From assembly GCA_020536535.1 (NCBI GenBank), contig JAHLWZ010000809.1:62001-126000 (forward strand): a stretch of 64,000 bases of DNA. The letters run 5' to 3'. Below, piece after piece: positions 2,908 through 61,171 of this stretch; position 1 is the stretch's first letter; each line of letters begins with the position of its first letter. Both the position numbers and the translations under genes were made by a program. Source of the stretch: Pelomyxa schiedti (lineage: Eukaryota > Protista > Evosea). The notes beneath the pieces are model-generated. The model worked only from the letters and a program-made list of their open reading frames with translations. It was not told the DNA's origin and made no database searches.

Positions 2908-3021
2908 TTTGTTTTCAAAAATACTTCGTAGCCCAGTCGTTTGCTCTGACACATTAGTTCCCCGGATGCCTCACGTACAACGACTAATTCTTTGAAATTC
3001 TAAAGTTCTAAAGACAAAAGA

Positions 3022-4184
3022 TTACAGAGACACATTAGTGCCGGTTAGAATGGATAGGGCAGCGAGTATGTGGGTTACAGCCGAGCCTCTGTCGCTGGAA
3101 TCTATGGCGGATGCCGCTTGCCTGGCATGCTTCTGTGCAGATTCCATCTCGTCCATGTTGGCTTTGTGGCTGAACTGGTATACTGGTGGAGAATTGTTCT
3201 GGAGTGACTGTGACTGGGACTGGGACTGCGATTGTGATTGTTGTGTTGTTGCTGATAAAGGTGGAATCGAGGCTGCCGAGTTGAGTGGTGGTGTGCTTTG
3301 TTGTTGCTGATTCCGTTGGCTGGTGGTAGGTTGCGGTGGGGTGGGAAAGGGGTCAAAGGGAGGGGATGCATGTGTGTCTTTGGGTGATTTGTTGGTAATG
3401 CTTTTGGCATGCTCTTCGCATACCTTCTGTTTTTGTTTTACCTGTTGTGCCTTGGTTACTTTGATTAGTGGATGATGCATACCGACTCAGACAGTTCCCC
3501 AAATATCAACAGGACCTGGAAGAAGTCCTTGGCAGCCAAAAAATTTTGTGCCGTTTTGCTTGTGGGCAGTGAAAACACCATAAAAGAAAGGCGGCAAATG
3601 CGGTACCTATCTGCTGTATTTGAGGCAAAATCGCGCTCTGCAATGTCATAAATCCTCGTAGCAAAAATTTCCACGTAAGGGCTGCCCATCCCCTCTTGGT
3701 CCAATAACCCAGCCAGGTTCTTCTTTTGCTATTCCATACAAAGTCACCCCACCTACACACCCCAACCACCAATATAAATAGTAACACCAGCGTGTCAAAG
3801 TGATATCCACCGCCACAACATAACACAACATTGGTGTAAAAAAAAAAAAAAAAAAAAAAACCCAATTTTGGGACACAAGTAACATGAAACTTAGCAAACA
3901 AAACAAAACAAAACAAAACAAACACAACACCACACCGTCTCGACGTCGTCCATCCAAGTCAATAGCAGGGCCTTCACGGCCTGGGGGCGGCCCCCCGTGC
4001 ACGCCTTGGTGATTTCGATGGCGCGCTGCAGCACGTACACCATGCAGTAGTAAGACATCACGCGGTCGACCGCCGCCACGTCCCGCGCTACGCCGTACAC
4101 CCCCGACACCTCCTTGATTACTTCCGGCACCTCCTCCGCCCCCACATTGCCACGGCCGCTACTCCCGGTCCCCGGTCCTGGCAT
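3022..4184 (-). CDS. VTA1: Vta1/LIP5 Vps4 cofactor (ESCRT)
   Basis: N-terminal MIT region (DRVMSYYCMVYVLQRAI; FATRIYDIAER; AQNFLAAKDFFQVL), P/Q/S-rich linker, C-terminal VSL motif AQKHARQAASAI. Confidence 0.85.
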
Positions 4185-12650: not shown

Positions 12651-15600
12651 TTAGGAGCCTCTGGGTTCAATTTTGAGTGAGGCTTGGTAGACGTCTGGTT
12701 GTGGCATTTGTGCTTCGGCGGAATTGATCAGATTCTACAAGTGGTTAGGTAGAAGCTATGTATATTGGGTGCAGTTACTTGAATGACTGGAACAGGGGTG
12801 AGATTGAATGGGACTTGTTGCCATCTTTTGAGCTGTTCAAGGATTCTGCCAATGATTTTCATTTTGGCCCAATTGATGAGTTGCGGGTTGTCTGGAATTC
12901 GATCGGGATTCCCATCTTCAGCAAAGGTGAGGTCCTGTTGTTGATTACTTGGGTTCTATGTAGAAACGAATAAATGGGATAGTAGAAACGAACCGATAGA
13001 ATCATTCCCATGAAAGGTACAAGTGGTGGAGTGGCTGCCGACAGCAATTCTCTGAGAATTTTAAAATTGAACTCAAGGACAGCATCAAACGATCTGAGCT
13101 TTGTTTCAAGCTCTTCCTTTTATTGATTGTTGGAGTTAGAAGAGTGCTGGGAGTGTAAATGACCACACCGTCCACGTTTTCCTTAGACGACTGCAGGGGG
13201 AGTCAAAGTAAGAAATTTATTTTACTGGGGAAGAATTTTACCGCACAGCGGAACTGTTCATTGCTGCAACGATTTGGCAAAAAGAACCAAAGTTATTTAA
13301 CTCTTTACAGTACTGCCAGTCTTCAGAAAAGAAAAGAAGGGTGGGGAATGAACCTCAGCGACTTTAAGGAATTTTTTTAGTATTTTCTGTCTATCTTTAA
13401 CCTTCTCTGATGCAACAATCAACCATGAAAGCCAGTTTGAAAACTTTGTCATCTCTTAGCCACGATTAGGGTGCGGGAAGAAGTGGACCTGATTAAAAAA
13501 CTGGGTACTTCTGACCACATTGGGTGAAGTTTTACTAGCATCAGGCTTGCACCACCCTAGTCCAAGTAATCTATTGTAGTTATTGTCGCGCCACCTAATT
13601 GCAAGCATACTCTTCTGGTTTCAGATTTCGAAAATCTAAACTGTCTTTAGTTGAAGAAGGGGAGCTTCAGGAGTAATTATACTTGAGTATTCTAGGAGAG
13701 TTAATTGGCGTGCCAATTCAAGAGACCGCACTCCCATAAGGCTTGTTAACGCCTCACCTTGTTTGTGCAGGGGTTTTGGGGGTGTGGGTTGTGTCTGAGG
13801 AATTTCGTAGGAAAAAAGCTTCAGAAGGGAGTTAGAAATGTACAAAAAAAAAGGTGGGAGATACAGTAGTTGCCAGAGCACCTTTCAAACATTTCGCTGA
13901 TTGAAGAACGTGGTCTGATTTGGTAGTGTACATGTGGGTTATGAAGTCATTGAGGCAGTCCAGGAGCTTTTTTTTTTGAGGGAAAAAGGGTGTCATTATA
14001 TTGTTTGGTAAAAGGAAACCAACTAATGGATCAACATGGAAGGCATCGAAATGAAAGTCAACCCATTCTCGGACAATTCTAATCACTCTTCACAACAAAG
14101 TGAGACAAGAAAAAAAGGATTGAGGTGGTAGAACTCTATTTGTATGGCCTCGAAGACGGGAGCAGGAATATTGTTGGATGCATCAAATCTTTTATGGAGT
14201 AGTTTGAGAAGTTCCATTGGGGTGGTGAATCCATTCATTGTTAGGAGCAATGAACGTATATCTATCAAATCTGGGAAGGAAGATGAAATAGGGAGGCCAC
14301 TAGGTGAGAACCAACCGGAGTGAATTGCTGTCACTTTTTCTATCAATTTTACTATTGTGCAACCCCAGAGGATTGTTGACTTGGATGCATCTAAAGCATA
14401 TCTCACATTATCCTCCCTATCAGGTTCACCAAAGAAGAAGTCGATAGTTTCACCAGTGCGCGCGGAAAGTGCTTTCTGGTCCATGGGCTCCCCTAATGTG
14501 ATGGTTCTCCTACGGAAAAGGTGTTCCGCAGCACTGGATGTCCCTTCTGAGAACGATTGAGTGTGGCCATGTGGGACCACTTTGCCTGTGGATCTCTGAG
14601 AAGGAAGGAGAAGCGTATGTGGTGCTGTAGTCCCTTCAGATACGAGCTGCTTTGGAGGGGCAGCTGTGGGAGGTGGTGGTGAAGGTGATGCTGTTGTGTG
14701 AGAAATCAATTGGGGCATTGACACACCTCGTTGTGGAGCGGGTGGGGGCGGTGCAGTTGGAAGGGGTAATGGGGGAAGATTTGCAGGTAAGCTGCAAGGA
14801 GATGGAGCCAATATTATTGGAGTAATCGATGAAGAAAGTGGAGAGACAGTTGCGGGCATAGGTGGCGTTGCAGGATTATTTAGTGTTGGTGTAGTCTTCA
14901 CAAATTGTGGCGGGAGGGGAGGAGCAGAGGAACTTGGTAGAGGTGGTGCGGTGGGAGGAAGCGGAATGTTATGCGGAGTAGGCCCCTGTACCTGCTGAGT
15001 AGGCGGGGGTGGGGCCTGTTGAGTGGGCGGGGGTGGAGCTTGTGAGAGTGGTAGTGGTGGTGGGTGAGGTATAAGCAGGGTCTGTGAGACGGGTGGAGGT
15101 GGCGGAGCTTGCGTACTTGGGGCTGGCAGCGCATGAGGGGGAAGCTTCAATAAAGGATTCGGACATGACCCAGTTGATTTTCCCAAAGGAGGGCCCAGTG
15201 GAGGTGAGGGTGTAAGTATTTTTGCAGTGGAGATGGTTGCTGCAGTCGAGGAAATAGTGGACCGATTGGATGCTGGAGATGTGCTTGTGGCATTACTGGA
15301 ATCTGGTACGTGACTCCCTCCCAGTGGTGAAGTACTAGAACCATCTACGATTGTTGTGTAGTTAATATTGAGTTAGTTGGAACTATTTTGTGTTGGTGCG
15401 ATGAAAAGTTTTTCCTCTAACTGCTCTCTGCACACCACGTGGAACGCTCCGTGGGCAATCGTGTGTGAGTGCTTGTTCTTTGCATTTTTTGTGTGTTGTG
15501 TATAAGCAATGTGTACAACGCATGCCTTGGTTTACAATTCCCCATAAAAGTCCTCTGTTAGGTTGACAAAGGTGTTAGTTGTCGAATTAAAGGCACTACA

Positions 15601-29921: not shown

Positions 29922-31776
29922 GCACTTCGTTTTCGTCATTCAACATGAGCAATGCCACCAACTCGTCGTCCTCGTCGCCAGCCGAGCTGGTCCTCACGCC
30001 CGGCGATACTGCCATCGTCCTTATTTCCGCTGCTTTGGTGTGTCTGATGACCCCCGGGCTGGCTTTCTTCTACGGAGGACTCGTTAGGAGAAAAAACGTG
30101 TTGAACATCATGTTGCAGAACTTTATTAGTATGGGCCTGGTGACAAGTACGGTTTTTTTCGGTTTCTTTCGTGTTTTGCTTATTTAAGATTCTAGCGATA
30201 TGGTATTTGGGAGGATTCAGCTTGGCTTTCGGTGATAGTAAAGGAGGAATTATTGGCTCGCTGGAGTACTTCGGACTCAGGAAGGTGGGAATGACACCAA
30301 ATCCCGACTACGGTGCAACAATTCCTTTCCTGGCTTTTTTCGTGTTCCAGGTATATGAGTGAGCCTGAGTTTTTCTTCTTCCCTTGCACTCATACTCAAT
30401 CCAGGAAATGTTCGCCATCATCACTCCTGCACTAATTACTGGTGCTATTGCTGAGCGTGTAACATTCTCTGCATGGACCATTTTCATGGCCCTATGGTCA
30501 ATTTTGGTTTACATACCTGGTATGCCCTCTTGATTACTGTAATGCTCTCGAACTCATCAACTCCAGTGTGCCACTGGGTGTGGGGTTACGGCTTCATGTA
30601 TGATTGGGGTGTCCACGATTTTGCTGGTGGATTGGTTGTACATTGCACAGCTGGGATGAGTGCTCTGGCTGGTGTACTCGTGATTGGACGGAGAAAGATA
30701 GTCGGTGAGAGTGGACCCCACAATGTAGCCTATGTGGCTCTGGGAACTGGACTTCTATGGTTCGGGTGGTTCGGTTTCAACGGTGGCTCTGCCCTGGCTG
30801 CAAACGGCGATGCTGCAATGGTTTGACCTTCGTATCTTTCTGGCCGCTAATATACTTTTAGGCATGGGTCACAACAGATGTAGCAGGTTCTTCTGCCATG
30901 ATGGTCTGGGTAGTTTTGGATCTCATCAAAAGCAAGAAGCCTAGTATGGTGGGCATGCTCACTGGAGGTGTTGCTGGTCTGGCAACAGTTACCCCGTGTG
31001 CTGGATGTAAGTTCCGCTCAGTGAGTACCACTTTGTAATCAGTTACAGTTATAAGACCCTGGGCCGGTTTTGTGATTGGTTTGCTAGCCTCTCTCATATC
31101 ATACGGTGCCGTCATTATCAAGACCAGAGTTGGATGGGATGATGCACTTGGTACGAGATATTCAGTTCTTTATCACAGCTCACCAACCACAGATGTCTGG
31201 GCTTGTCACGGAGTTGGTGGAATCATGGGAAGCATCCTTCTTGGAGTTTTTGCTCAAGAGGAGGTCAATGGCGTGTCTGGCCTCATTGAAGGAAATGGAT
31301 ATCAATTTGGCATACAAATTGCGGCTGCCTGTATAATCGGCGCTTGGTCCGTCTTGGTCACAGTGGTTTTACTGCTGGTAATCAACATAGGAATAAAGAT
31401 ACGTGTATCAGAAGATGCCGAAATGGTGGGATTGGATATTCTTACAACTGCTGATCACGGAGCCTACGATTATGACAGAGATGGAGGAGCACTGGCTGAC
31501 ATGGCCGGCACAGGCGGTGCACAAGATCCCCTTGGATCAGCTTCTGCAGTGGTAGGCACTTCCAATGAAGGTGCTATTTCAGACGCATCCAGTGGCACAG
31601 AGATGCTACCAGTTCACAGTGACAAGGAGCCCAGTGACGAAGAGAACCAAAAGGGAAAGAAAGACAAGGAAAAGGACAAAGATAAAGACAAGGACAGAAA
31701 AGGCAAATCAAGAAAGTCCAAAGATCAGTCCTCATCCAGTGAAAAAGAGAGACGGAGGGATAAGCACGCCCACTGA
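29918..31776 (+). CDS. amt: Ammonium transporter (Amt/Mep family)
   Basis: [62 protein letters not shown]; twin-His present. Confidence 0.96.
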
Positions 31777-35252: not shown

Positions 35253-38200
35253 ATGTCCAACCATGAAGAAGAGCAAGCAGGTTGGTACTCTGTTGTAATT
35301 TATGCAATGGGCACATGTATTTTTGTAGTATATATAAAAATAAAATCAATAATAAATATTTCAATACAGCCTCTGCTCATGAAGAACCGGAAGATTCGAA
35401 CACGAAATTGAGAGGGATGGTTGTTGAAGAACTGGTAACTACAGAAAAAAAGGTACCAGTATTAATTTCAAAACCGTAACTCACACTTCAACCTTTGGTA
35501 CTTCGTATTTCCACTGTTCCTCCTGTCAGTATTTGGAAGATTTGTACACACTGATAGTTTAGTATGGCCTTCCGTGTATTATAGTAAACTTAAAATTACT
35601 AGTTATGTCCGGCCAATAAGAACTCAATTTCCTGAGTTACTTCAGACTGCCCAAATGGTAACGGTGCCCACAAACTTTTTTTTTTTGATTGCAGTTCAAT
35701 TTAAGGGATCTGTTCTTGCTGAGTTCTCGACTGCCCAGTTGATTTTTGACTTGAACACTGATTTGTATTCAGAATTATCTAAAGCGTATTCCGAGAGTGA
35801 TGATTCTACCATTGGACAGATTTTTCTAAAAATGGTCTGTGTAAGCACCCAAGGTAACACACTTATAATAACATAGGCATCACAATGGGATTACTACGCT
35901 GTTTACTGCAACCACCAAGAAGATGCAGTTAGCAAGCTTGAAACACTGGAAAGCTCAAATGCTCAATTCAGCACTTTTTTGCAGGTTAAAATAGGCTTTC
36001 CACAAATCAAAAGTCACGATGTTTCTTCCTACTATAGAAATGCCGTGCTGGAACTCATGAGAAACTTCGGCTGCAAGACTTTGTGGTGAAACCTTTTCAA
36101 AGATTGCTGAAATATCCACTGCTCTTACAAGTACTATCTTTTCTTCAACTTTGTTATTTATTTCATTTTCTCTCTAAACCAATATGTTCAGTCCTTGCTC
36201 AAGTATACATCACCCACACACAGTGACTATGATAACATTTCCAAAGCTTTGCAGTCCATGGAGGCCACAATCAGCGCAATTAATACCAATAAAACCCATT
36301 CAGATAACCTTAAAAAACTTCTGTTAATAAACTCATTAGTGGTCTCTGGAAAGGTTTGTCATACCTATAGAGTGCGCCTCTCTAATCAATCAAAAAAGCA
36401 CTTCACTTTTGTGCAACCTGACAGAAAATATGTTATGGAAGGAAATCTGACAAAAATTTGCAACAAACCACGGCAACGCAAATGCTTTCTTTTTTCTGAT
36501 GCAGTACGAAAATAATCAACATTTGCATGTAACTTACAGAGCCTCTCACAATCACCTCTGTAGTTTGTTTACTGTAAGGAACTGATGTCCGGCAAACTTA
36601 AAGTTGGTGGCGTGATATTGATAGAGGATTTGGAGATTGAAGATATTCCCGACACAAAAAGTGAGTGAAAACTGCCCAGCTTGTAATGCAACTAAATTTC
36701 CTTCTTTTTTGCAGCTTATTCCAATGCGTTGAAGTTCATTCATGAAGACAAATGTGAGTCTTCAACCAAATCCAAACCGAGTACCCGCATTCACATCATA
36801 TGCTGCTCTGACACCTTTGAAAAGGGAACATGGCTAAAAGCTTTATTGTATCTCACAATTGAATTCGACATATTAACTGGAAAAACTGCAGGGATCTCAA
36901 GCAACCAAATCAATCCAAGCAACTTCGAAGGACGAGCTCTGAGGCCTGTCCTTCACACACCACAACACCCCCGAAGCTCTCACCTACAATGTCATTGCCC
37001 TCTACCGATTTCCGGTGTGTAGCTACACTTTTCCTTCCTCCCTTATAGCATTTTATTCACTGGCCACAAGAAATTTAAATGATCAAGTGAAATCTAGGGC
37101 TTACTCCACTCCCCCACCGGTTCAGGTAAAAATTTGACACCGTGCTATCTGTGTGTATTCATTATTCCAGATGAACCCTGTCAAGGCAGTTGAAATATCA
37201 ACGGAAATCGATAATGTTGAGCCAATGCAATCTCGTGAAGGGGACCCCAGCAACATCGAGTGCTGTGAAGGCACCTGCACTCCATCCAAACCCCCGTCTA
37301 AACCTCCTCCTGAGCTCCCTTTCCATCGAATCACCAAGAGTAGTTCTCTGGGAGAACTAAAATCCAGAGGATTGCTGCCTGGACTCCCGCTAGAGGATGC
37401 TGCTCCACAGTCACCTTCAGGAGCCAGTCTGGTTACTCCACAGTTAGGTGACAAAATCTTGCCCTCCACAGACAACACACAGGCACCACTAGCAGAAGGG
37501 GTTGTTGCTTCTACTACTGTGGCCAGGCTGCCCAGGAGGGGTCCACCAAACTTGCTCAGACCTGTTAACCCCTCTCTGCAGCACATCTCAATGCAATTAC
37601 AGCAATCACTTAAACTGCGTACAACTCCATTGCAGCGGGCACCATCACCCGATTCCTTGCAGGCGGCAACAATTGACCCTCCAAAGGCACCAACGACATT
37701 GAATGTGCCAACACCGCAGCTGACAGTCTCACCTGTGTCACCCCCCACTACCGAAGACGCACAGCAACCGCCTGTAAATACACCAACGCCAGTGCGGTTC
37801 ACACATAAATCACGTTCCTTTTCCTTTTCCACCTCCCTCCTGCGGCCACTTCCTGCTCCGCAGCTCAAGCAGCCACAAACCCCACACAGCGCAATCACCA
37901 CAACACCCACCCCAACAGAACCGGCACAAGTTGCATTGCCGGTGCCCACCCCACAGCCCCAAACACAAACAACCCCCGCTCCAACAACAACAACAGCAAC
38001 CACAACCACAACACCGGCAACAACAAACAACACGGAAGACACGGCAACCTCGCCCTGTGCCACCCCGCACACATCCCCGACACTCCTGTACACCCCATGC
38101 ACACACAGACCCCAGCCTCCACCAGCAAACATTTCCTCACCCGAATCATCAACCACTGCATCCCATCCCAAGCCAACACCACCACCGAGACTCGGGGGCC

Positions 38201-38316
38201 TATCCTACCCACCACCACCAACAACAACCAACACAGCACCACCCACTCCTTCTGTGAATATCACCACCACTGTACCAACTCCTCAGTCCCGCCCTCATGC
38301 CTCATCTGATATCTGA
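35253..38316 (+). CDS. RhoGEF (DH-PH) with long Pro/Thr-rich C-terminal tail
   Basis: VVEELVTTEKKYLEDL, KPFQRLLKYPLLL..LLKYT...HSDY, PH EGNLTK...RKCFLFSD. Confidence 0.9.
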
Positions 38317-38715
38317 ATCTTTCCGTGCAACTCCATTTTACGACAATTTCCCACCACATCATTTTTTGACAGATTTGAGATTTGAAGTTTTCCTCCCCAC
38401 AAACAAATAAAAAAAAAACATGTTCGTGGGTGACGGTGTTACTGTCGTCTTGTCGGCGCGTAGATCTAGGCGGTTGTTTGGACATCATACGAACCTCTTG
38501 GACGGTACGGTGCTGCCGTTTGTTACTTGTTCTTATCGCTTTCTCTTTCTCCAGAATGCGCACTCGATTCTGTCAGTAGTTTCATCTCGGCTCGCATCTT
38601 CTTGTGTCAACTGCCTCATTTTTCTTCCTCTTCGTTGGTCGTATTCATCTTCATCGCTCAACAGGATTCTCACAGTGGCGGTGTTTTGGGGTGAGTGATG
38701 CGTGTTGTATAGAGC

Positions 38716-40049
38716 GCGATGGCAGGGGTCTTGCAGGAATGGGTGTTGGATAAGTCTCGTGTTTCAGATCATCCACTGGGCAACCCCACCTGTCACTTTG
38801 GGGGTTGGGCCTCATGTGGGGGCGCTGGGGGGGTGGAGATACACGAGGTGTGGTCTACACCTTCCACACCCACAGCTTCGGGCGGCGTAATCACCCGCCT
38901 TCGGTTGATGGGCATGGGGTGTGCCCAACTGCTGTGCTCAGACGTATATTCTGGGCACCGTGGGGGGGTATAGACCGTGCACTGCGCCTTGTGGAGATAC
39001 ACCCTTCTTCTCCTCTTGCATGGGACCCAGCCTTTCGGGTTTCACTGTGGTTCCCTGGGTGGCGCCTGGCATGTTATTTTTCCAGCTACTTGTTCCTTCA
39101 CTGATCCGTCTTGATATCGTTTTGGGTGGAGAGGTCATGAGTTGATTGTGGGGAAGAGTAAGGGGGGTCGTCTCCAGTAGACCTCTACGGCCCCAACTGT
39201 TGGTCTCTTCTGGGCTCCATGACATGCCGTGTGGGAGTAATTGCTGATAGGAGTAGGTGGGGGTTCACGAGGATGTATGGCCTCACCCTCTGGGGTGGCC
39301 CAACTGTTGTGCTCAGATATATATTCTGGGCACCGTGGGGGGGTACAGGCCGTGCCCTTGTGGAGATATCTCTCCTTCCTCCTTTGCTCTCACACGTGGA
39401 GTTCAGTTGAAGAAGCTTCACTTTGGCCTCATGGGGATTGACAGGCCACTTTCCCTTCACTACTTCCCATCCCAATTCAACTCCTCTCGCCTCTTCACCC
39501 TCAGCGTGATCTTGATAGCAAGTGGTGGTGGCATTTGGTGGTGTTTGGTGGGTAATAGTTGTGGTTCGGGGAACCCCAACCGTTACTTGCGGGTTGGGCC
39601 TCGCGTGGGGGAAAAGAACAGGTGGAGATACACGAGGTGTGGTCTACACCTTTCACACCCACAGCTTCGGGCGGCGTAATCACCCGCCTTCGGTTGATGG
39701 GCATGGGGTGTGCCCAACTGCTGTGCTCAGACGTCTCTTCTGGGCACCGTGGGGGGGTATAGACCGTGCACTGCACCTTGTGGAGATACACCCTTCTTTA
39801 CCAGTGGAGGTCGGATGGAGATAAACGAGGTGTGGCCTCACCTTCCACACCCACAGCTTCGGGCGGCGTAATCACCCGCCTTCGGTTGATGGGCATGGGG
39901 TGTGCCCAACTGTGGTGCTCAGACGTATATTCTGGGCACCATGGGGGGGTACAGGCCGTGCACTGCACCTTGTTGAGATACACCCTTCTCTTTACACCTG
40001 CGTGCAACTCAGCTTGCGGGTTTCGCTGTGGTTTCCTTTTTCTGCAACT
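38716..40049 (+). ncRNA. Putative long structured RNA: three tandem G-U-rich hairpins (38716-39120, 39124-39500, 39557-40049)
   Basis: Nested long stems found by eye; non-WC pairs are mostly G-U on the plus strand; compensatory changes between paralogous copies; no continuous ORF. Confidence 0.65.
38833..39983 (+). repeat. Four-copy repeat module: 38833-39002, 39257-39371 (internally deleted), 39622-39791, 39815-39983
   Basis: Copies 1 and 3 differ at 4 of 170 nt; full copies are bounded by the direct repeat GTGGAGATACAC or variants, 157-158 nt apart. Confidence 0.95.
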
Positions 40050-40813
40050 CGGTGGTGCTGTGTTTGGGGTGGGGGGATTATCTGGTGGCGTCTTTGACTC
40101 TGAGTATTTGGCAAAGCAATTTCAGTATATCATGCATGACCTTTTGGTTTAGCTATTATTCTAAAACATATTGCACAAGTCACAGTTAGGTGTTATTGCT
40201 CGAATTAGGTTTCAATTATCCTGTACAGTTTGGAGTTCTCTACTGCAGGTTGTATAAATCACTTCCACAATCAACTAATCGCTCTAAAATTTCTCAGGTT
40301 TACTATTATCAGATTGATGTTCTCAAGTTTTTCAGAATGCAAGTTCAATATGTAGGATCACAGGCTCACAGCTGATTGGTTTCTTCTGTACGTTCCTACT
40401 CTGGTATTAGGAGGAGCCTTGACGGGAGTTGTTGAATCTTGGCCACATTCTCAAATTCCCCCATGGAACCTCCGCTCCCAGAGTTACTTCACGATTCCCG
40501 GCGCGCACTGTCACCACGCGGTCATTCACTCTGTGTGCTCTCACTACAGCCAGCTGGTTGTTTTCTTTGCTACTTGAAAGAGGTTGCTGTCTACTCGACT
40601 GCCTGCCAGGTTGTTTTAATCACACTTACACAATTAATCAATTAATCGCTCTGATAGGGATCTCACAAGGCCTTACAACAACTGCCTCTGCAATGACATC
40701 CCAACTCAGCCCACCCAAAAGACTTTCCTACCGCACCACGGAAAAAACACAATTTCACAACACATTCTATTTGTGGCACAAGTTGCAACAATACTTTGTT
40801 TTTCTTGTCTCGA

Positions 40814-42543
40814 CTATAGCAGAGGGCATTCAATACTGCAAAAAAGTTAATTTGGCATCCAGAAATTGTATGGTTTTGGGTACATGAGCGTTCGTAGTTT
40901 TGCAACCACATCCTCGATTACGGGTCTCTGCACATTTGTTATTGACAAACAGGCCGCAAGAGAAGAAAGAAACCTCAGATGCCGTTTGGGCCCAGCATTC
41001 GCTGATGAGCTGTTTCTGCCGAAAGAGTTAACTTTCAGGTAATGATGGGAAGAATACCAGGCCAGCGGGCACAGCAACAGGGGGATGTTGCCCATTTGAA
41101 TGGGGGTAGGAGAGGAAATCTGGAATACCCGGGCGTAATGCACATGTGACATATAGAGGTACATCTTGGCTTGCAAATGGTATTTCTTCTGTCATTATTT
41201 CATAAATGGTTACCCCAAGAGCATAGCTACAGATATTTAATTAACTTGGGAAAAGATATATTATGGATTCCTACATATCGGTCGTATATCCTGACCTTCT
41301 TCCGGGTCCTTCATTTTGAAGCTCAGGAGGGCGGTACGGAGCTGTACACAACAATTACTTTCATAAGGAAAATAGGGGGTTACCAGTTCCAGGTGTTATC
41401 TCTACTATAGCATCTTTTTGACCCAGCAATAATATAGCTTGACCGAAGTTGGCAATCTTTTTCAAGTTAGAATAAGAGTTAATGGGGTGAAAACGTTCCC
41501 ACTTTAACATTGAAATCATAGTCCACAAATAAATTAGAAGGTCTCAAGTCCCTGGTGGGGAACTGTTAAGAGATCTCAACATAAAGAAAAAAAGGCTGAA
41601 CTGATGACTAGCTTTTACAGTGCAATGCAAAAAGGCTAGACCTTGTGCCTATAGAGTATGTAAATTGTTTGCGTTGTGAAAGTTAATCATACAATGCCAA
41701 GAGATAACCGTAATTTATGTATCAGACCAATGCCCCCAAGGTGAAAGAAATTATGCACCAACCGACCAGGGAGTAGAGACACAGGGCAGTGGATCAATCT
41801 GAATAGGTCACATGGCAGGGTTTCCATCACAATCATGAAAGCTCCGTTGTTTATACAAGTACCTGCAGAGATATAAGTTGTGTTTGGTGGAAATACATTG
41901 TTACCAATCATCAACACCACATTAGGGTGGTAAGAACTGGCGGAACATTAATACAAGACAGAGAAAGCGACGTGGTACCTGAGCAGTGTCGCTTCCCTAC
42001 GAAACTTGGCCAGTTCATTAAAAGTCTTTACTGAAACTGCAGTTCCATCCAATATTGCTTGGGAGAAACAACGGTGTTAGAAATTATGGGAAATGTTGGT
42101 GTCACCAACATACCACTCTTCAGATAGATAGGCGTTTCTTTTGAATCTGAAGTAAAGTGCAGGGACTCAAAAGCAATGTCTCGAACAGTAAGAACCACCG
42201 GATACACATCGGGTGTGTGAACAGGCGCGGGAACGGTGCGCTTCAATCGCAACGTCGACGACCCTATCAATGGGGGATGTGCAAGAGCAAGTTCCGCATG
42301 TTCAACAGTGTCGAACTCTATGATCGTCCAGTTTCCTTGGTGCGACGTGCGCACCCTGGGGGAGAGTAAAAAAAATGTTGGTAGGTACAACGGGAGTGGG
42401 AGGAGAGTAGAACCAACTCACTTGTGATCAGGGAAAAGCGCTTGCACATTCTCATAGTGACCGAGGTGTTTCTGCTTTGTTTTGAGAATCTCGGGTCCCT
42501 CCTTCCTGGATCGAACCTGTACACCAGGTACTGTGGTCGCCAT
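40814..42543 (-). CDS. RRM-like domain fused to a TKL-type pseudokinase
   Basis: IIEFDTVEHAELAL (RNP1-like); kinase VSVK, HPNVV, TRDLRPSN, ANFG, YRPPE, DIYALG, CW...RP. Confidence 0.75.
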
Positions 42544-56392: not shown

Positions 56393-58327
56393 CTACTGGA
56401 GAAGAATCTGTAGTATGACCAGTTTGTGCAAAGATTTATTAGAAAAGAATAGGTTGTTGTGAGCACTACCAAAAATTCCTTTATGTCCAGTTTTCCATCC
56501 CCGTTTTTATCGGCAATGGATATAAGTGATTCTGCTTCTTCAGGAGTAAGGGGTTCTCCTTGGCTGTTTGTTTTTGTTGTTGGTAATATGAAATAACACA
56601 GTGAGGCATATGACCTTATTAAAGCTTGGCGGAGTTCATTTGCGGAAATGACCCCATCGCCACTAGTATCAAATAGCCTAAAGGCCTCGAGGAGAGTGGT
56701 GGCAGGATCACTGGCAGGCTTAAGAGCCAGTGCTAGGGCAAAGAATTCATCAAATGAGAGCTTACCGTTTTTGTCTGTATCCAAATCTGGGTTTTGTAAA
56801 CAAAAACGCAAGAATTCAAAGCGTGGTTACCTCCCACAGCTTCTTTTATCTCCCGCATGGATGGGTTCAAGCCATAGCGACGAAGTAGCACGGCGACTTC
56901 GTTGGCTTCAATAGTGCCATTATGATTTAAATCACATTCTGTGAATAATGCATGTGCACGGAAAAGCTGGTCTGTGGTTATTGCAGCTGCTCTTCCGCAC
57001 TTTGTACAGTTATTGCTTCCCCCTGTTTTTTATTTTACAACGTGAGTTCAACTAAAAGCGTAGGTAATAAGTAATACAACCTTCAAAATGACAGGAAGCC
57101 CCAGAGGCGCACTTGAGGAGTGCTTTCCTCTTTGCGGAAAGAAAGACAGATGCAGCTGGTTTTTGGGATGAATTTTTTCTGCCACTGGTTTCTGCTGCAG
57201 CACTTGCTTTTGCTGAGGTTTTTTTGGCAGAAGATTTATTTGCAGTACCAGTAGGGCTAGCACCTGCAGCAGAATGTAGCTGTGCTGAGTAGGAATGAGG
57301 GAGTGTGATCGGTGGGACAACTGGTGCTGTATGGGATTTGGCATCCCCGTCAGCTTTTGTGTCAGAGGCCGCTTCTGATTTCTTTGATGCAGAATCAGTG
57401 GTTGTCTCCACAGCTAGTTTCGATTCCTTTGGTTTCGGTGATGCAGGGTGTGTGGCACTGGCAGTATCCGGTTTGCTTGCAGTGTCAGTTGAATTAATGC
57501 TACTTGACAAAGGCTTAGGAGAGCCCGCTTTGGATGGAGTTTGTGGCTTTCTATTCGGTGAAGATGGAGTGCCTGGTTTGGAATTGCTTCCCTTTTTTTG
57601 CGAAGCGCGAGAACCAGGGCGAGTGGGACTATCTACAAAATGGTACTCATCAACCTTAGCAGCAGTCATTGTACTAGTAGTTGTTGTGGAAGTTGTGGTA
57701 GTTGTTGTAGTTGTAGTGTTACTATTATTAGCATTAGGCGTGGCTGGCTTTGTGGGCTTTCCGCCGTCACCCATAAGTTCCTCGACGCTGGCGTCGATCT
57801 TGATTCCTTTATTTGGCGACGTGCTGCTGGACAGGGGCGGCGGCGTGGATGACGCCGAGGGAGCCGGGGAAGTAGCGGTCGAAGCCGGATTATGGGACGA
57901 CGCGGACGTGGGCTTGGTGCTCGACGACGGGGTGTCTGGTTTGTTACTGGTTTTTGGCGTGCCTGGCTTGTTGTTGTTGTTGGACTTGGGTGTGGATACC
58001 TTGTTCCCAGGAGTTGATGGTTTGTTAGGTGGCTGTTGTTGTTGAGGTGGTGCAGTTGTGGATGTTGGCGTAGATGTGGTTGTGGATGGGGATGGGGCTG
58101 GGGCTGGGGCAGCAGAATCTGCTGCTTTGGGTTTGTTGTTTGCTGGTTCAGCTTGTGGTTTAGAGGACTTCAGGTTGGTTGGAGCCTCAGTTTTGTTCGT
58201 GATGTCCTATTCATGTTCAAAAAAAATACCAAACCAAAAAAAGTTGGTTGGTTTGGTTGCTACGAGTGCTTGTTGTTTCAGCTATTGTTTTTTTTTTTTT
58301 TTTGGTTTATACTTTTGTTGTGTCCAT
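56393..58327 (-). CDS. Calmodulin-like 4-EF-hand protein with long low-complexity N-terminus
   Basis: EF loops DLNHNGTIE, DTDKNGKLS, DTSGDGVIS, DKNGDGKLD; N-terminal P/S/T/K-rich region. Confidence 0.85.
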
Positions 58328-59958: not shown

Positions 59959-61171
59959 CTATGTAGATCTCAACAATCTCCATTTCGCTTGGTTTGTTGG
60001 TTGGCCCACAACACCCCGTTCCCAGACCAATTTGTTTTCATTTTTTAAAAAAGAAAAAATTGACAGTTCAATCTGCAATCACCGTCTTCAGTATCCTCAG
60101 GGTTGTGAGAGGAATGGGATCCATTCCACCTCCTCAAATGTAAGCCAATGCTTGAGCAAGAGGAAGCCCAAAATCATGCAGAATGGGCCCATCTGGGCAT
60201 TTAATAAAATTTTCTTTGAGGAGGTTGCGTTTCAAGTGGTATCTGCTAGGGTAATTGCTGTTGCATGGTGTATTTGTGTGAATACTGGATTAATGGTTGG
60301 TTATAACCAGTGTCTAATTGTAGTAATCTTTGATTCTCGTGCCGGAATTGTTCAGTTCGGTGGAACATACTAGTATCTTGGTGGGACAATGGCCTTTTTG
60401 TATTTTGGCCTGAGTTAATAAGCCTGTTGGTTCCAGGTCCAAGAAGCTGCTTGTAAGCAAGAGCTTTTATGCATGTGTTTTGATTCTTGCAGTTTCTTGC
60501 ACAGGATATGCTGGAACCCCTGCAGCACTCCACTGCATGTTGCCATGCAGGGAAACATACTTCACAATAGAACTGGTTCACAGTGCAACTTTACTTTTCT
60601 CATGGTCATGTAAAGTATCTTGTTGATTTCCTGGATAGAGTCACATAGTTAAATTACATTTCACAAAACCAAACAGTGTCAAGTGTGCTAGGTAGAAAAG
60701 AAGATTGACTATCCAAGTATAAAGCACCTGAAAAGTTATGACCTTCTTTATAAAAGATGTCCCTAACACATTTGTTTACAGATATCTGTTTCATGTGAAG
60801 AAAGCTCTTTCTTGGTTGTACAATCATCAAGGAAGTCAGTGGTGCTAGTACCACCGAAACCGGAGAATGTGGTGGTAGCTTGACGTCGAAGGAGGGTGAT
60901 AAAGCTTTATACCCCTCCTTAGACAGCGAGCCATGACCACGTACTCCAGCATCAGTGGTACTAGTACCGAGGAAGTACCGATGCTCGATGATTGTGCATA
61001 CTCTGGCGTCATGTGGACTGTCTTGAACTTCAGCACTGAATCTGTTACCCCACCATCTCACTCTTCCTGTGATGAGCGTTAGTCAGGATAAGTAAGTGTT
61101 ACTCGGCACCGGTGGTCCTGAATCTTGGCGTGCCGGGTTGTAAAAAAAAATTGAAAAGAGGCATCTTTGGT

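What the first reader, a model, noticed from the sequence alone, without database searches (positions are those of the whole stretch)
38716..40049. 1.3-kb array of three long G-U-rich hairpins: candidate undescribed structured RNA locus
Seen in sequence: the plus strand folds into three consecutive rods. Rod I (38716-39120): 38735-38750 pairs with 39081-39097 (one bulge) and 38802-38822 with 39013-39033 (20/21 paired). Rod II (39124-39500): 39124-39134/39490-39500 (11/11), GAGTTGA/TCAACTC, 39210-39219/39397-39406 (10/10) and 39228-39240/39384-39396 (13/13). Rod III (39557-40049): 39557-39564/40042-40049 and 39585-39609/39997-40021 (22/25). Non-WC pairs are overwhelmingly G-U, which would be A-C on the minus strand, so the fold is strand-specific, unlike a neutrally decaying DNA inverted repeat. 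The paralogous outer stems of rods I and III covary (CATG/CATG vs CGCG/CGTG; G-U to C-G). The array fills one of the few multi-kb gaps in a compact gene-dense region and has no continuous ORF. Inference: a polycistronic pri-miRNA/hpRNA-like small-RNA precursor, an endogenised viroid-like or rod-shaped RNA element, or a new lncRNA class.
Basis: partly seen in the sequence, partly recalled or inferred. Interest (0 to 1): 0.92.

Follow-up and report, generated by a model that had tools for sequence, protein, structure and literature searches.

The report
Strand-specific triple RNA hairpin array
A 1.3-kb non-coding stretch in what looks like an anaerobic amoeba genome folds, on one strand only, into three long G·U-rich RNA hairpins built from a duplicated module; it is most likely a previously undescribed structured RNA, perhaps a small-RNA precursor, but no expression data or relatives could be obtained.

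Summary
The plus strand of 38716-40049 folds into three separate rods (z = -5.7, -6.7 and -7.5 against dinucleotide shuffles). The minus strand barely beats chance (-0.7, -2.5, -2.5). An alignment of the arms that uses no energy model gives 56 G:T against 8 A:C mismatches (p = 6e-10). A symmetric palindrome elsewhere in the window gives 6 against 6. The flanks are unstructured, and the array is the strongest plus-strand folding outlier in the 64 kb.

The rods are local duplicates. A Y-shaped module of about 180 nt occurs three times, and its 69-nt apical hairpin four times. The copies differ by four compensatory double changes. Their C/T and A/G differences are equal in number, which argues against a strand-biased mutation process.

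There is no Rfam family, ribozyme, protein signal or target-site duplication, and no other copy in the window or in the metagenome, viral or prokaryote collections. The host is an intron-rich amoebozoan of the Archamoebae type. The array lies 400 nt downstream of a RhoGEF gene on the same strand.

Best reading: an RNA selected for its plus-strand fold, most likely a hairpin precursor cut by an RNase III. Transcription and small RNAs remain untested. The viroid-like reading is not supported.

The parts
38716..39120 (+). Rod I. A G·U-rich outer stem of about 95 bp (38716-38835 / 39000-39120) capped by module M1.
   Evidence: MFE -194.6 kcal/mol, z -5.70 on the plus strand and z -0.72 on the minus strand. 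Helices are listed. Arm duplex z is -6.7 against arm-wise shuffles.
39124..39500 (+). Rod II. A long imperfect stem (39124-39290 / 39345-39500) with two side hairpins, capped by a shortened module that keeps only the apical hairpin B.
   Evidence: MFE -181.0, z -6.71 on plus and z -2.50 on minus. Arm duplex z is -9.0. Its pairs stay entirely within the rod when 37900-40300 is folded as a whole.
39557..40049 (+). Rod III. Its outer stem (39557-39624 / 39985-40049) is paralogous to that of rod I. It encloses two tandem modules, M2 and M3.
   Evidence: MFE -242.5, z -7.54 on plus and z -2.54 on minus. It is 89-91% identical to rod I over 227-232 nt. A 192-nt tandem repeat is present.
38832..39009 (+). 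Module M1, a Y-shaped three-way junction. It has a 13-bp closing stem, a 15-nt C/A-rich single strand, hairpin A (38870-38911) and hairpin B (38912-38980).
   Evidence: Repeat family D1. The module folds alone at -96.7 kcal/mol, z -5.44, and the centroid equals the MFE.
39621..39798 (+). Module M2, 98% identical to M1.
39813..39990 (+). Module M3, 85-93% identical to M1 and M2, with a 1-nt deletion relative to them.
38912..38980 (+). Apical hairpin B, copy 1 of 4. The others are 39701-39769, 39893-39961, and 39298-39344 in rod II. It has 26 bp and a 7-nt loop. The inner 9-bp stem and both flanking arms are invariant in all four copies.
   Evidence: Folding 38909-38983, which holds this hairpin with 3 nt on each side, gives -43.3 kcal/mol, z -5.84 on plus and -20.6, z -0.84 on minus. 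Covariance model R1 finds exactly these four copies in the window.
38836..38841 (+). One side of a symmetric 6x6 internal loop. The same hexamer GAGAUA sits on both sides (partner 38994-38999) and closes the module. The same loop closes M2 (39625-39630 / 39783-39788) and M3 (39818-39823 / 39975-39980).
   Evidence: Read. That it forms tandem G·A pairs or a protein-binding site is inference.
38655..38715 (+). G/T-rich spacer before rod I. Similar spacers lie at 39501-39556 and 40050-40110. They are weakly complementary to the C/A-rich end of the upstream coding sequence (38140-38290).
   Evidence: Inverted repeats I1-I3, I9 and I10. Duplex z is -2.4 to -2.8 against shuffles. Whether these spacers belong to the unit is uncertain.
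37153..38316 (+). Neighbour: the Pro/Thr-rich last long exon ORF of a RhoGEF-like gene on the same strand. The end of its DH domain lies in ORF 36195-36515. The stop codon is 400 nt before rod I.
   Evidence: PF00621 RhoGEF, E = 5e-4, below the gathering cut-off. No homologue of the 387-aa ORF was found.
38406..38411 (+). A hexamer resembling a poly(A) signal, 90 nt after the RhoGEF stop codon. The next one on the plus strand is at 41528.
   Evidence: The motif is not enriched over chance in the window, and its use in this organism is unknown. This is a weak hint that the gene's mRNA may end before the array.

Best explanation
The locus encodes a plus-strand RNA whose fold is kept by selection. 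The RNA is either an independent non-coding transcript or a read-through or long 3' UTR of the upstream RhoGEF gene. As it is made, it folds into three separate long imperfect hairpins. Each has a G·U-rich stem of 60-110 bp capped by one or two copies of a conserved Y-shaped module. The array grew by local duplication of one ancestral hairpin. The G·U pairs keep the RNA double-stranded. They also spoil complementarity at the DNA level and in any antisense transcript. My committed mechanism is that the rods are substrates of an RNase III-type enzyme (Dicer-like), making this a long-hairpin or polycistronic small-RNA precursor. The invariant 69-nt apical hairpin B is the most likely source of a discrete product. 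Shown here: the fold, its strand specificity, its sharp boundaries, its duplication history, the pair-preserving changes, and the absence of coding or known-family signals. Inferred: transcription, processing, and any target.
For: The plus strand folds far better than shuffles, and the centroid nearly equals the MFE. The minus strand is near chance with an ill-defined ensemble. In the MFE of the whole array, 97 of 482 pairs are G-U, against only 2 A·C single mismatches. The energy-free arm alignment gives 210 Watson-Crick, 56 G:T and 8 A:C positions, p = 5.6e-10, while an in-window control palindrome gives 6 against 6. Arm-wise shuffles give z -6.7, -9.0 and -4.4 on plus, against -2.2, -4.6 and -0.4 on minus. 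The flanks are unstructured, z -0.67 and +1.83. The array is the top plus-strand outlier in a scan of the window. There are four compensatory double changes between copies, one of them a double transversion, plus several one-sided G-C/G-U/A-U changes. Differences between copies are 18 C/T against 17 A/G, so recent mutation shows no strand bias. Hairpin B has the size of a pre-miRNA, with 26 bp and a 7-nt loop, and its arms are invariant in four copies. Precedents from the literature: G:U hairpin designs still yield siRNAs while breaking the DNA inverted repeat (PMC9263138). Dicer-like cleavage of hairpins embedded in UTRs and introns occurs in a unicellular eukaryote (PMC4817775). The related Entamoeba has an RNase III with dsRNA-cleaving activity and Argonaute-bound small RNAs (PMC4521922, PMC2582682).
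Against: No transcription or small-RNA data were available. No relatives were found in any collection, so covariation rests on three or four recent paralogues and is only suggestive: about nine pairs appear broken or re-registered, against about eight preserved by change. No sequence of 15 nt or more elsewhere in the window matches the array on either strand, so no target is seen. The best-studied small RNAs of Archamoebae, the 27-nt 5'-polyphosphate RNAs of Entamoeba, are not hairpin-derived (PMC2582682). Stems broken every 5-14 bp and a conserved branched cap are not typical of classical hpRNA loci. They would fit a protein-binding structural RNA equally well.
Confidence: 0.4

Rival explanations
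1. The array is a cis-acting structured part of the RhoGEF transcript, either a long 3' UTR or a long intron. It would control the stability, localisation or translation of that mRNA. Alternatively it would act as an RNase III-cleaved fail-safe terminator between convergent genes, with no trans-acting small RNA.
For: The array is on the same strand as the RhoGEF gene and 400 nt downstream of it. No recognisable coding sequence lies between 38317 and about 42000, and the next recognisable exons are on the minus strand, so the layout is convergent. The G/T-rich spacers are weakly complementary to the end of the coding sequence. Cleavage of UTR-embedded hairpins that regulates the host mRNA is documented in Chlamydomonas (PMC4817775).
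Against: A poly(A)-signal-like hexamer lies 90 nt after the stop codon and none follows for 3 kb (weak evidence). 1.3 kb of duplicated hairpins is far more than known cis elements need. The spacer-to-CDS complementarity is only z of about -2.5 and involves low-complexity sequence.
Confidence: 0.2
2. The array is a new class of structural non-coding RNA unrelated to RNA silencing. The conserved Y-shaped modules, with their symmetric GAGAUA/GAGAUA internal loops, would bind proteins, and the rods would serve as scaffolds.
For: The module is a well-defined three-way junction: its MFE equals its centroid, z -5.4. It carries an invariant apical hairpin, a conserved 15-nt single strand, and an identical symmetric 6x6 loop closing each of the three copies. 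It matches none of the 4227 Rfam families.
Against: There is no conservation outside this locus to show that the module matters. The copies are 85-98% identical, so their invariance may only reflect recent duplication.
Confidence: 0.15
3. The array is a non-functional DNA-level repeat: remnants of foldback or MITE-like inverted duplications. The G:T excess would come from a strand-biased mutation process, such as transcription-associated deamination, and not from selection on an RNA.
For: The array is locally duplicated, as repeats are. The arms carry many transversion-type mismatches (51) and gaps. The window holds another hairpin-forming palindrome at 60817-60998.
Against: The 56:8 asymmetry is much larger than any transcription-associated skew I know of. 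Differences between copies show no C/T against A/G bias, 18 against 17. Compensatory double changes, one a double transversion, are not expected from biased transitions. No target-site duplications flank the rods. No dispersed copies occur in the window. The region is richer in G+C (54%) than its surroundings (about 45%), the opposite of decay driven by deamination.
Confidence: 0.12
4. The array is an endogenised viroid-like or retrozyme-like rod-shaped RNA element.
For: It has a rod-like, partly branched fold with no coding capacity.
Against: No hammerhead, hairpin, HDV-like, twister or other ribozyme family matches, even at E <= 10. The opposite polarity does not fold. The three rods are diverged local paralogues within one chromosomal gap, not unit-length repeats. 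No match was found in the viral contig collection.
Confidence: 0.02
5. The repeats encode a repetitive protein or are exons of a gene.
For: Mechanical ORFs of 84-140 aa cross the array.
Against: The ORFs are explained by A-poor sequence having few stop codons. They have no Pfam hit. A search of 5.8 billion proteins found no homologue. Module M3 carries a 1-nt deletion relative to M1 and M2, so the copies do not share a frame. M1 is open in two frames at once.
Confidence: 0.01

Closest known systems
Long-hairpin RNA (hpRNA) loci and inverted-duplication proto-miRNA genes of animals and plants
   Same: They share long intramolecular imperfect duplexes of about 100 bp per rod, growth by local and tandem duplication, and tolerated G·U pairs that keep the RNA fold while the DNA repeat decays.
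   Different: No small RNAs, Dicer dependence or target are shown here. The stems are more interrupted. Each rod is capped by a conserved branched module rather than a simple loop. The lineage (Archamoebae-like) has no described hairpin-derived small RNAs.
Polycistronic pri-miRNA clusters, and UTR- or intron-embedded miRNA precursors of Chlamydomonas (PMC4817775)
   Same: Both have several hairpins in series on one strand, next to or within a coding transcript. Hairpin B, with 26 bp and a 7-nt loop, has the size of a pre-miRNA and is duplicated four times.
   Different: The rods are 377-493 nt, much longer than single pre-miRNAs. Rfam miRNA models match only at chance level. Expression is unknown.
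Engineered G:U hairpin RNA transgenes (PMC9263138)
   Same: Both use G:U wobble pairs to retain the RNA hairpin while disrupting the DNA inverted repeat. In that study this prevented self-silencing and still gave siRNAs.
   Different: That is an artificial design in which every C of one arm was replaced. Here about 17-20% of pairs are G·U, spread over both arms of a natural locus.
Viroids and retrozymes
   Same: Both are non-coding, rod-like or branched RNA folds.
   Different: Here there is no ribozyme, no fold in the opposite polarity, a chromosomal single locus of diverged paralogues, and no evidence of circular RNA.
Foldback or MITE-type transposons
   Same: Both are hairpin-forming inverted arms of a few hundred bases.
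   Different: No target-site duplication is seen and no dispersed copy occurs in 64 kb. The complementarity is strongly strand-specific, whereas the window's own palindrome at 60817-60998 is symmetric.

Membership tests
hpRNA / hairpin small-RNA precursor (including pri-miRNA cluster) | A long or pre-miRNA-sized intramolecular stem that is significantly more stable than chance on the transcribed strand | tested here: met
   z -5.7, -6.7 and -7.5 for the rods, and z -5.8 for hairpin B
hpRNA / hairpin small-RNA precursor (including pri-miRNA cluster) | Transcription of the hairpin strand | not testable with these tools
hpRNA / hairpin small-RNA precursor (including pri-miRNA cluster) | Discrete 20-30-nt small RNAs mapping to the stems as duplexes with 3' overhangs | not testable with these tools
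   No small-RNA data.
hpRNA / hairpin small-RNA precursor (including pri-miRNA cluster) | RNase III/Dicer-like and Argonaute proteins in the host | not tested
The relative Entamoeba has both (PMC4521922, PMC2582682).
hpRNA / hairpin small-RNA precursor (including pri-miRNA cluster) | A complementary target or parent gene | tested here: inconclusive
   No shared 15-mer on either strand elsewhere in the 64 kb. There is only weak low-complexity complementarity to the RhoGEF CDS tail. A genome-wide test was not possible.
Any Rfam family (miRNA, snoRNA, ribozyme, lncRNA domains) | A covariance-model score at or above the family's gathering threshold | tested here: not met
   0 hits in the window at gathering thresholds. 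The best sub-threshold hits score 18 bits or less at E >= 0.8.
Viroid-like / retrozyme element | A self-cleaving ribozyme motif (hammerhead, hairpin, HDV-like and similar) | tested here: not met
Viroid-like / retrozyme element | Structured RNA of both polarities, and circular RNA | tested here: not met
   Minus strand z -0.7, -2.5 and -2.5 with an ill-defined ensemble. Circularity is not testable.
Foldback / MITE transposon | Target-site duplications flanking the terminal inverted repeats | tested here: not met
   The flanks of the three rods, read, share no direct repeat.
Foldback / MITE transposon | Multiple dispersed copies | tested here: inconclusive
   No copy outside 38716-40049 in the window, and none in the metagenome, viral or prokaryote collections.
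Protein-coding repeat | A conserved reading frame and detectable homologues or domains | tested here: not met

The most novel reading that the evidence does not exclude
The locus encodes a new class of structured non-coding RNA, so far seen only in this archamoebid-like lineage. Duplicated Y-shaped modules, each closed by a symmetric GAGAUA/GAGAUA loop and mounted on a G·U-rich rod, would act as protein-binding units, with a function unrelated to known small-RNA pathways.
Probability: 0.17. Interest if true: 0.8.

Novelty: new variant of a known kind. Interest (0 to 1): 0.58.

Why it matters
If it is transcribed, this would be the first hairpin-type structured RNA locus described in the Archamoebae. 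The only well-studied small RNAs of that group, in Entamoeba, are 5'-polyphosphate products that do not come from hairpins. It would therefore bear on whether hairpin-based RNA silencing, or something new, exists in this lineage. It is also a clean natural example of G·U wobble pairs keeping an RNA duplex while removing the DNA-level inverted repeat and any antisense fold. That principle was recently exploited in engineered hairpin transgenes (PMC9263138). The strand-asymmetry test used here (G:T against A:C in an energy-free arm alignment, with a symmetric palindrome in the same window as a control) is a simple general way to separate RNA hairpins from DNA palindromes.

Tried and rejected
- **Rfam:** gathering thresholds on the whole window gave nothing, and E <= 10 on 38300-40400 gave only chance-level hits.
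- **tRNA and tmRNA scan:** none found.
- **Other copies in the window:** BLASTN of the region against the window and covariance model R1 of hairpin B found no copy outside the array.
- **Pattern scans for relatives:** two metagenome scans, one viral scan and one prokaryote genome scan all gave zero.
- **Protein searches:** the neighbouring 387-aa exon ORF and a 100-aa ORF inside the array found no homologues.
- **Pfam:** ORFs inside and beside the array gave nothing, apart from a weak RhoGEF end in the upstream exon.
- Contigs of the same or related species (P0001, P0002, P0151) could not be fetched, so no orthologous locus could be compared.
- the exons of the RhoGEF gene were searched one at a time, and the joined model was not searched. 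Paralogue pair mapping used coordinate maps from separate alignments, and the arm tests used two separate sequences.
- **Readings rejected:** protein-coding repeats; viroid-like element; MITE with target-site duplication; an amplification or assembly chimera (those give perfect inverted copies, not diverged G·U-rich arms); and Pol III units (T-runs lie inside the 3' arms of rods I and III).
- **Global fold:** folding 37900-40300 as a whole pairs the C/A-rich CDS tail with G/U-rich segments and partly opens rod III. I treat this as mostly a low-complexity effect.
- **Human sequence:** nothing suggests a human contig.

Full report
**What is there.** Between 38716 and 40049 the plus strand folds into three adjacent, separate hairpin domains.
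- Rod I is 38716-39120, 405 nt, MFE -194.6 kcal/mol.
- Rod II is 39124-39500, 377 nt, MFE -181.0.
- Rod III is 39557-40049, 493 nt, MFE -242.5.

Against dinucleotide-preserving shuffles the z-scores are -5.70, -6.71 and -7.54, and none of 100 shuffles folds as well. In each case the centroid is almost the same as the MFE, so the fold is well defined. The reverse complements give z -0.72, -2.50 and -2.54, with centroids far from the MFE. One of them, 39210-39219/39397-39406, is a possible alternative but is not part of the MFE.

**Is it more than chance or composition?** Four controls say yes.
- The immediate flanks are unstructured. 38317-38715 gives z -0.67 and 40050-40450 gives z +1.83, so the boundaries are sharp.
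- In a 400-nt sliding scan of the whole window, corrected for G+C, the windows over the array are the strongest plus-strand outliers.
- The 5' arms are G-rich and the 3' arms pyrimidine-rich, so I shuffled each arm on its own and computed inter-arm duplex energies. The plus strand stays at z -6.7, -9.0 and -4.4. The minus strand gives -2.2, -4.6 and -0.4.
- MFE programs count G-U as a pair and A·C as a mismatch, so I also aligned each 5' arm to the reverse complement of its 3' arm with a plain DNA score. This gave 210 Watson-Crick positions, 56 G:T, 8 A:C and 51 transversion-type mismatches (binomial p = 5.6e-10 for G:T against A:C).

A palindrome elsewhere in the same window (60817-60998) folds equally well on both strands (z -6.3 and -7.3). 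It gives 6 G:T against 6 A:C. That is what a DNA-level inverted repeat looks like, and the array is different.

**Anatomy and history.** The rods are local paralogues. Rod I (38778-39056) matches rod III in two pieces: 39568-39798 at 91% and 39813-40037 at 89%. Rod III is therefore a rod I-like hairpin whose cap was tandemly duplicated with a period of 192 nt.

The cap is a module of about 180 nt: M1 38832-39009, M2 39621-39798 and M3 39813-39990. On its own it folds into a Y shape at -96.7 kcal/mol, z -5.4. Its parts are:
- a 13-bp closing stem;
- a conserved 15-nt C/A-rich single strand;
- hairpin A, about 42 nt (the 46-nt stretch 38868-38913 that holds it gives z -3.6);
- hairpin B, 69 nt with 26 bp and a 7-nt loop (the 75-nt stretch 38909-38983 that holds it gives -43.3 kcal/mol and z -5.8 on plus, against -20.6 and z -0.8 on minus).

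Rod II carries a shortened cap that keeps only hairpin B, so hairpin B occurs four times, with its inner stem and both arms invariant. Each of the three full modules is closed by a symmetric 6x6 internal loop with the same hexamer, GAGAUA, on both sides (read). G/T-rich spacers precede rod I, separate rods II and III, and follow rod III.

**Selection or mutation bias?** A strand-biased mutation process acting on an inverted repeat could in principle also produce G:T without A:C. Three observations argue against it.
- Differences between the paralogous copies fall equally into the two complementary transition classes: 18 C/T and 17 A/G, with 21 transversions.
- The copies differ by four compensatory double changes: 38791/39044 and 38815/39020 (U-A to C-G), 38932/38960 (C-G to U-A), and 38842/38993 (C-G to A-U, a double transversion). 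Several one-sided changes also keep pairing.
- The array is richer in G+C (54%) than its surroundings (about 45%), the opposite of decay driven by deamination.

The covariation evidence is only suggestive. It rests on three or four recent copies, and about nine pairs appear broken or re-registered in the comparison.

**What it is not.**
- No Rfam family reaches its threshold anywhere in the window. At E <= 10 only chance-level miRNA and lncRNA fragments appear, and no ribozyme. There are no tRNAs.
- The mechanical ORFs of 84-140 aa that cross the array arise because A-poor sequence has few stop codons. They have no Pfam match and no homologue. M3 has a 1-nt deletion relative to M1 and M2, which breaks any common frame.
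- No target-site duplications flank the rods.
- No further copy exists in the window by BLASTN or by a covariance model of hairpin B.
- No exact-pattern match was found in the metagenome (two scans), viral or prokaryote genome collections.

**Context.** The window is an intron-rich eukaryotic chromosome segment. It carries exons of an ABCG-type transporter and talin-like repeats (both my reading of the translations), an ammonium transporter and an S28 peptidase (Pfam at or about the cut-off), and weak, below-cut-off Pfam matches to RasGEF and EF-hand domains.

An ammonium-transporter exon is 100% identical to an ORF on a 129-kb NCBI contig. Its best named relative, at 73%, is from Mastigella eilhardi. 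The host is therefore an Archamoebae-type amoebozoan. It is not Mastigamoeba balamuthi, whose genome is 60.7% G+C (PMC8136499). A Pelomyxa-like genome with 7.4 introns per gene (PMC8887013) would fit, but that is inference.

The array lies on the same strand as a RhoGEF-like gene and 400 nt downstream of it. That gene's Pro/Thr-rich last exon ORF ends at 38316. A poly(A)-signal-like hexamer sits 90 nt after the stop codon, and none follows on that strand for 3 kb (weak evidence, and the pattern came from general knowledge). No recognisable coding sequence lies between 38317 and about 42000. The next recognisable exons are on the minus strand.

**Mechanism.** The best-supported statement is that a plus-strand RNA fold is under selection. 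I put that part at about 0.8.

For what the RNA does, I commit to an RNase III-processed hairpin precursor (hpRNA or polycistronic pri-miRNA-like). Its stems are long imperfect duplexes. A pre-miRNA-sized hairpin is the most conserved and most duplicated element. G·U pairs are known to keep hairpins competent for siRNA production while removing the DNA inverted repeat (PMC9263138). Hairpins next to or inside coding transcripts are Dicer-like substrates in another unicellular eukaryote (PMC4817775). A relative, Entamoeba, has an active RNase III and Argonaute-bound small RNAs (PMC4521922, PMC2582682). All of this second layer is inference, so my overall confidence is 0.4.

The rivals are a cis-acting structured UTR, intron or terminator of the RhoGEF gene (0.2), a new protein-binding structural RNA (0.15), and non-functional repeat DNA with biased mutation (0.12). 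The viroid-like and coding readings are effectively excluded.

**Limits.** Contigs from the same or related organisms could not be fetched, and no orthologous locus, genome-wide copy count or expression evidence was available. The RhoGEF exons were searched one at a time, and the joined gene model was not searched. The proposed next steps are descriptive only: expression, small-RNA mapping, distribution and covariation in relatives, chemical probing, and an inventory of silencing genes.

Noticed in passing
window 60817-60998: A palindromic hairpin of about 180 nt (arms 60841-60904 / 60905-60968, plus 60817-60831 / 60984-60998). It folds equally well on both strands (z -6.3 and -7.3) and has 6 G:T against 6 A:C mismatches, so it is a symmetric DNA-level inverted repeat. 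It lies inside the mechanical ORF 60654-61061 on the minus strand. I used it as an internal control. Its nature is unknown (MITE, hairpin RNA or other).
   Followed up: partly
window 38140-38290 against 38655-38715, 39501-39556 and 40050-40110: The G/T-rich spacers of the array are weakly complementary to the C/A-rich end of the upstream RhoGEF coding sequence. One match is a perfect 14-mer, 38230-38243 / 40051-40064. Duplex z is -2.4 to -2.8 against shuffles. This could be a low-complexity coincidence or a trace of an inverted duplication of the gene's end.
   Followed up: partly
window 38836-38841/38994-38999, 39625-39630/39783-39788, 39818-39823/39975-39980: Each full module is closed by a symmetric 6x6 internal loop with the identical hexamer GAGAUA on both strands. 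It could form tandem G·A pairs or a protein-binding site, but that is inference only.
   Followed up: no
window 38406-38411: A poly(A)-signal-like hexamer followed by an A-run lies 90 nt after the RhoGEF stop codon. The next one on the plus strand is at 41528. It hints that the gene's mRNA may end before the array. The motif is not enriched in the window.
   Followed up: partly
window 31072-31773 (and the window as a whole): On the host's identity: an ammonium-transporter exon is 100% identical to an ORF on a 129-kb NCBI contig and 73% identical to a Mastigella eilhardi transcript protein. The window is intron-rich with about 45% G+C, so a Pelomyxa/Mastigella-clade archamoeba is likely and M. 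balamuthi is excluded. If the assembly came from amplified single cells, amplification chimeras are a general caveat for perfect inverted repeats, but not for these diverged rods.
   Followed up: partly
window 37122-38316: Long mechanical ORFs overlap on both strands (349 aa on minus, 387 aa on plus) over the Pro/Thr/Gln-rich low-complexity tail of the RhoGEF gene. The minus-strand ORF is probably an artefact of the composition. The same effect explains the strong plus/minus folding asymmetry at 14601-15400, 57801-58200 and 3001-3400 in the window scan.
   Followed up: no
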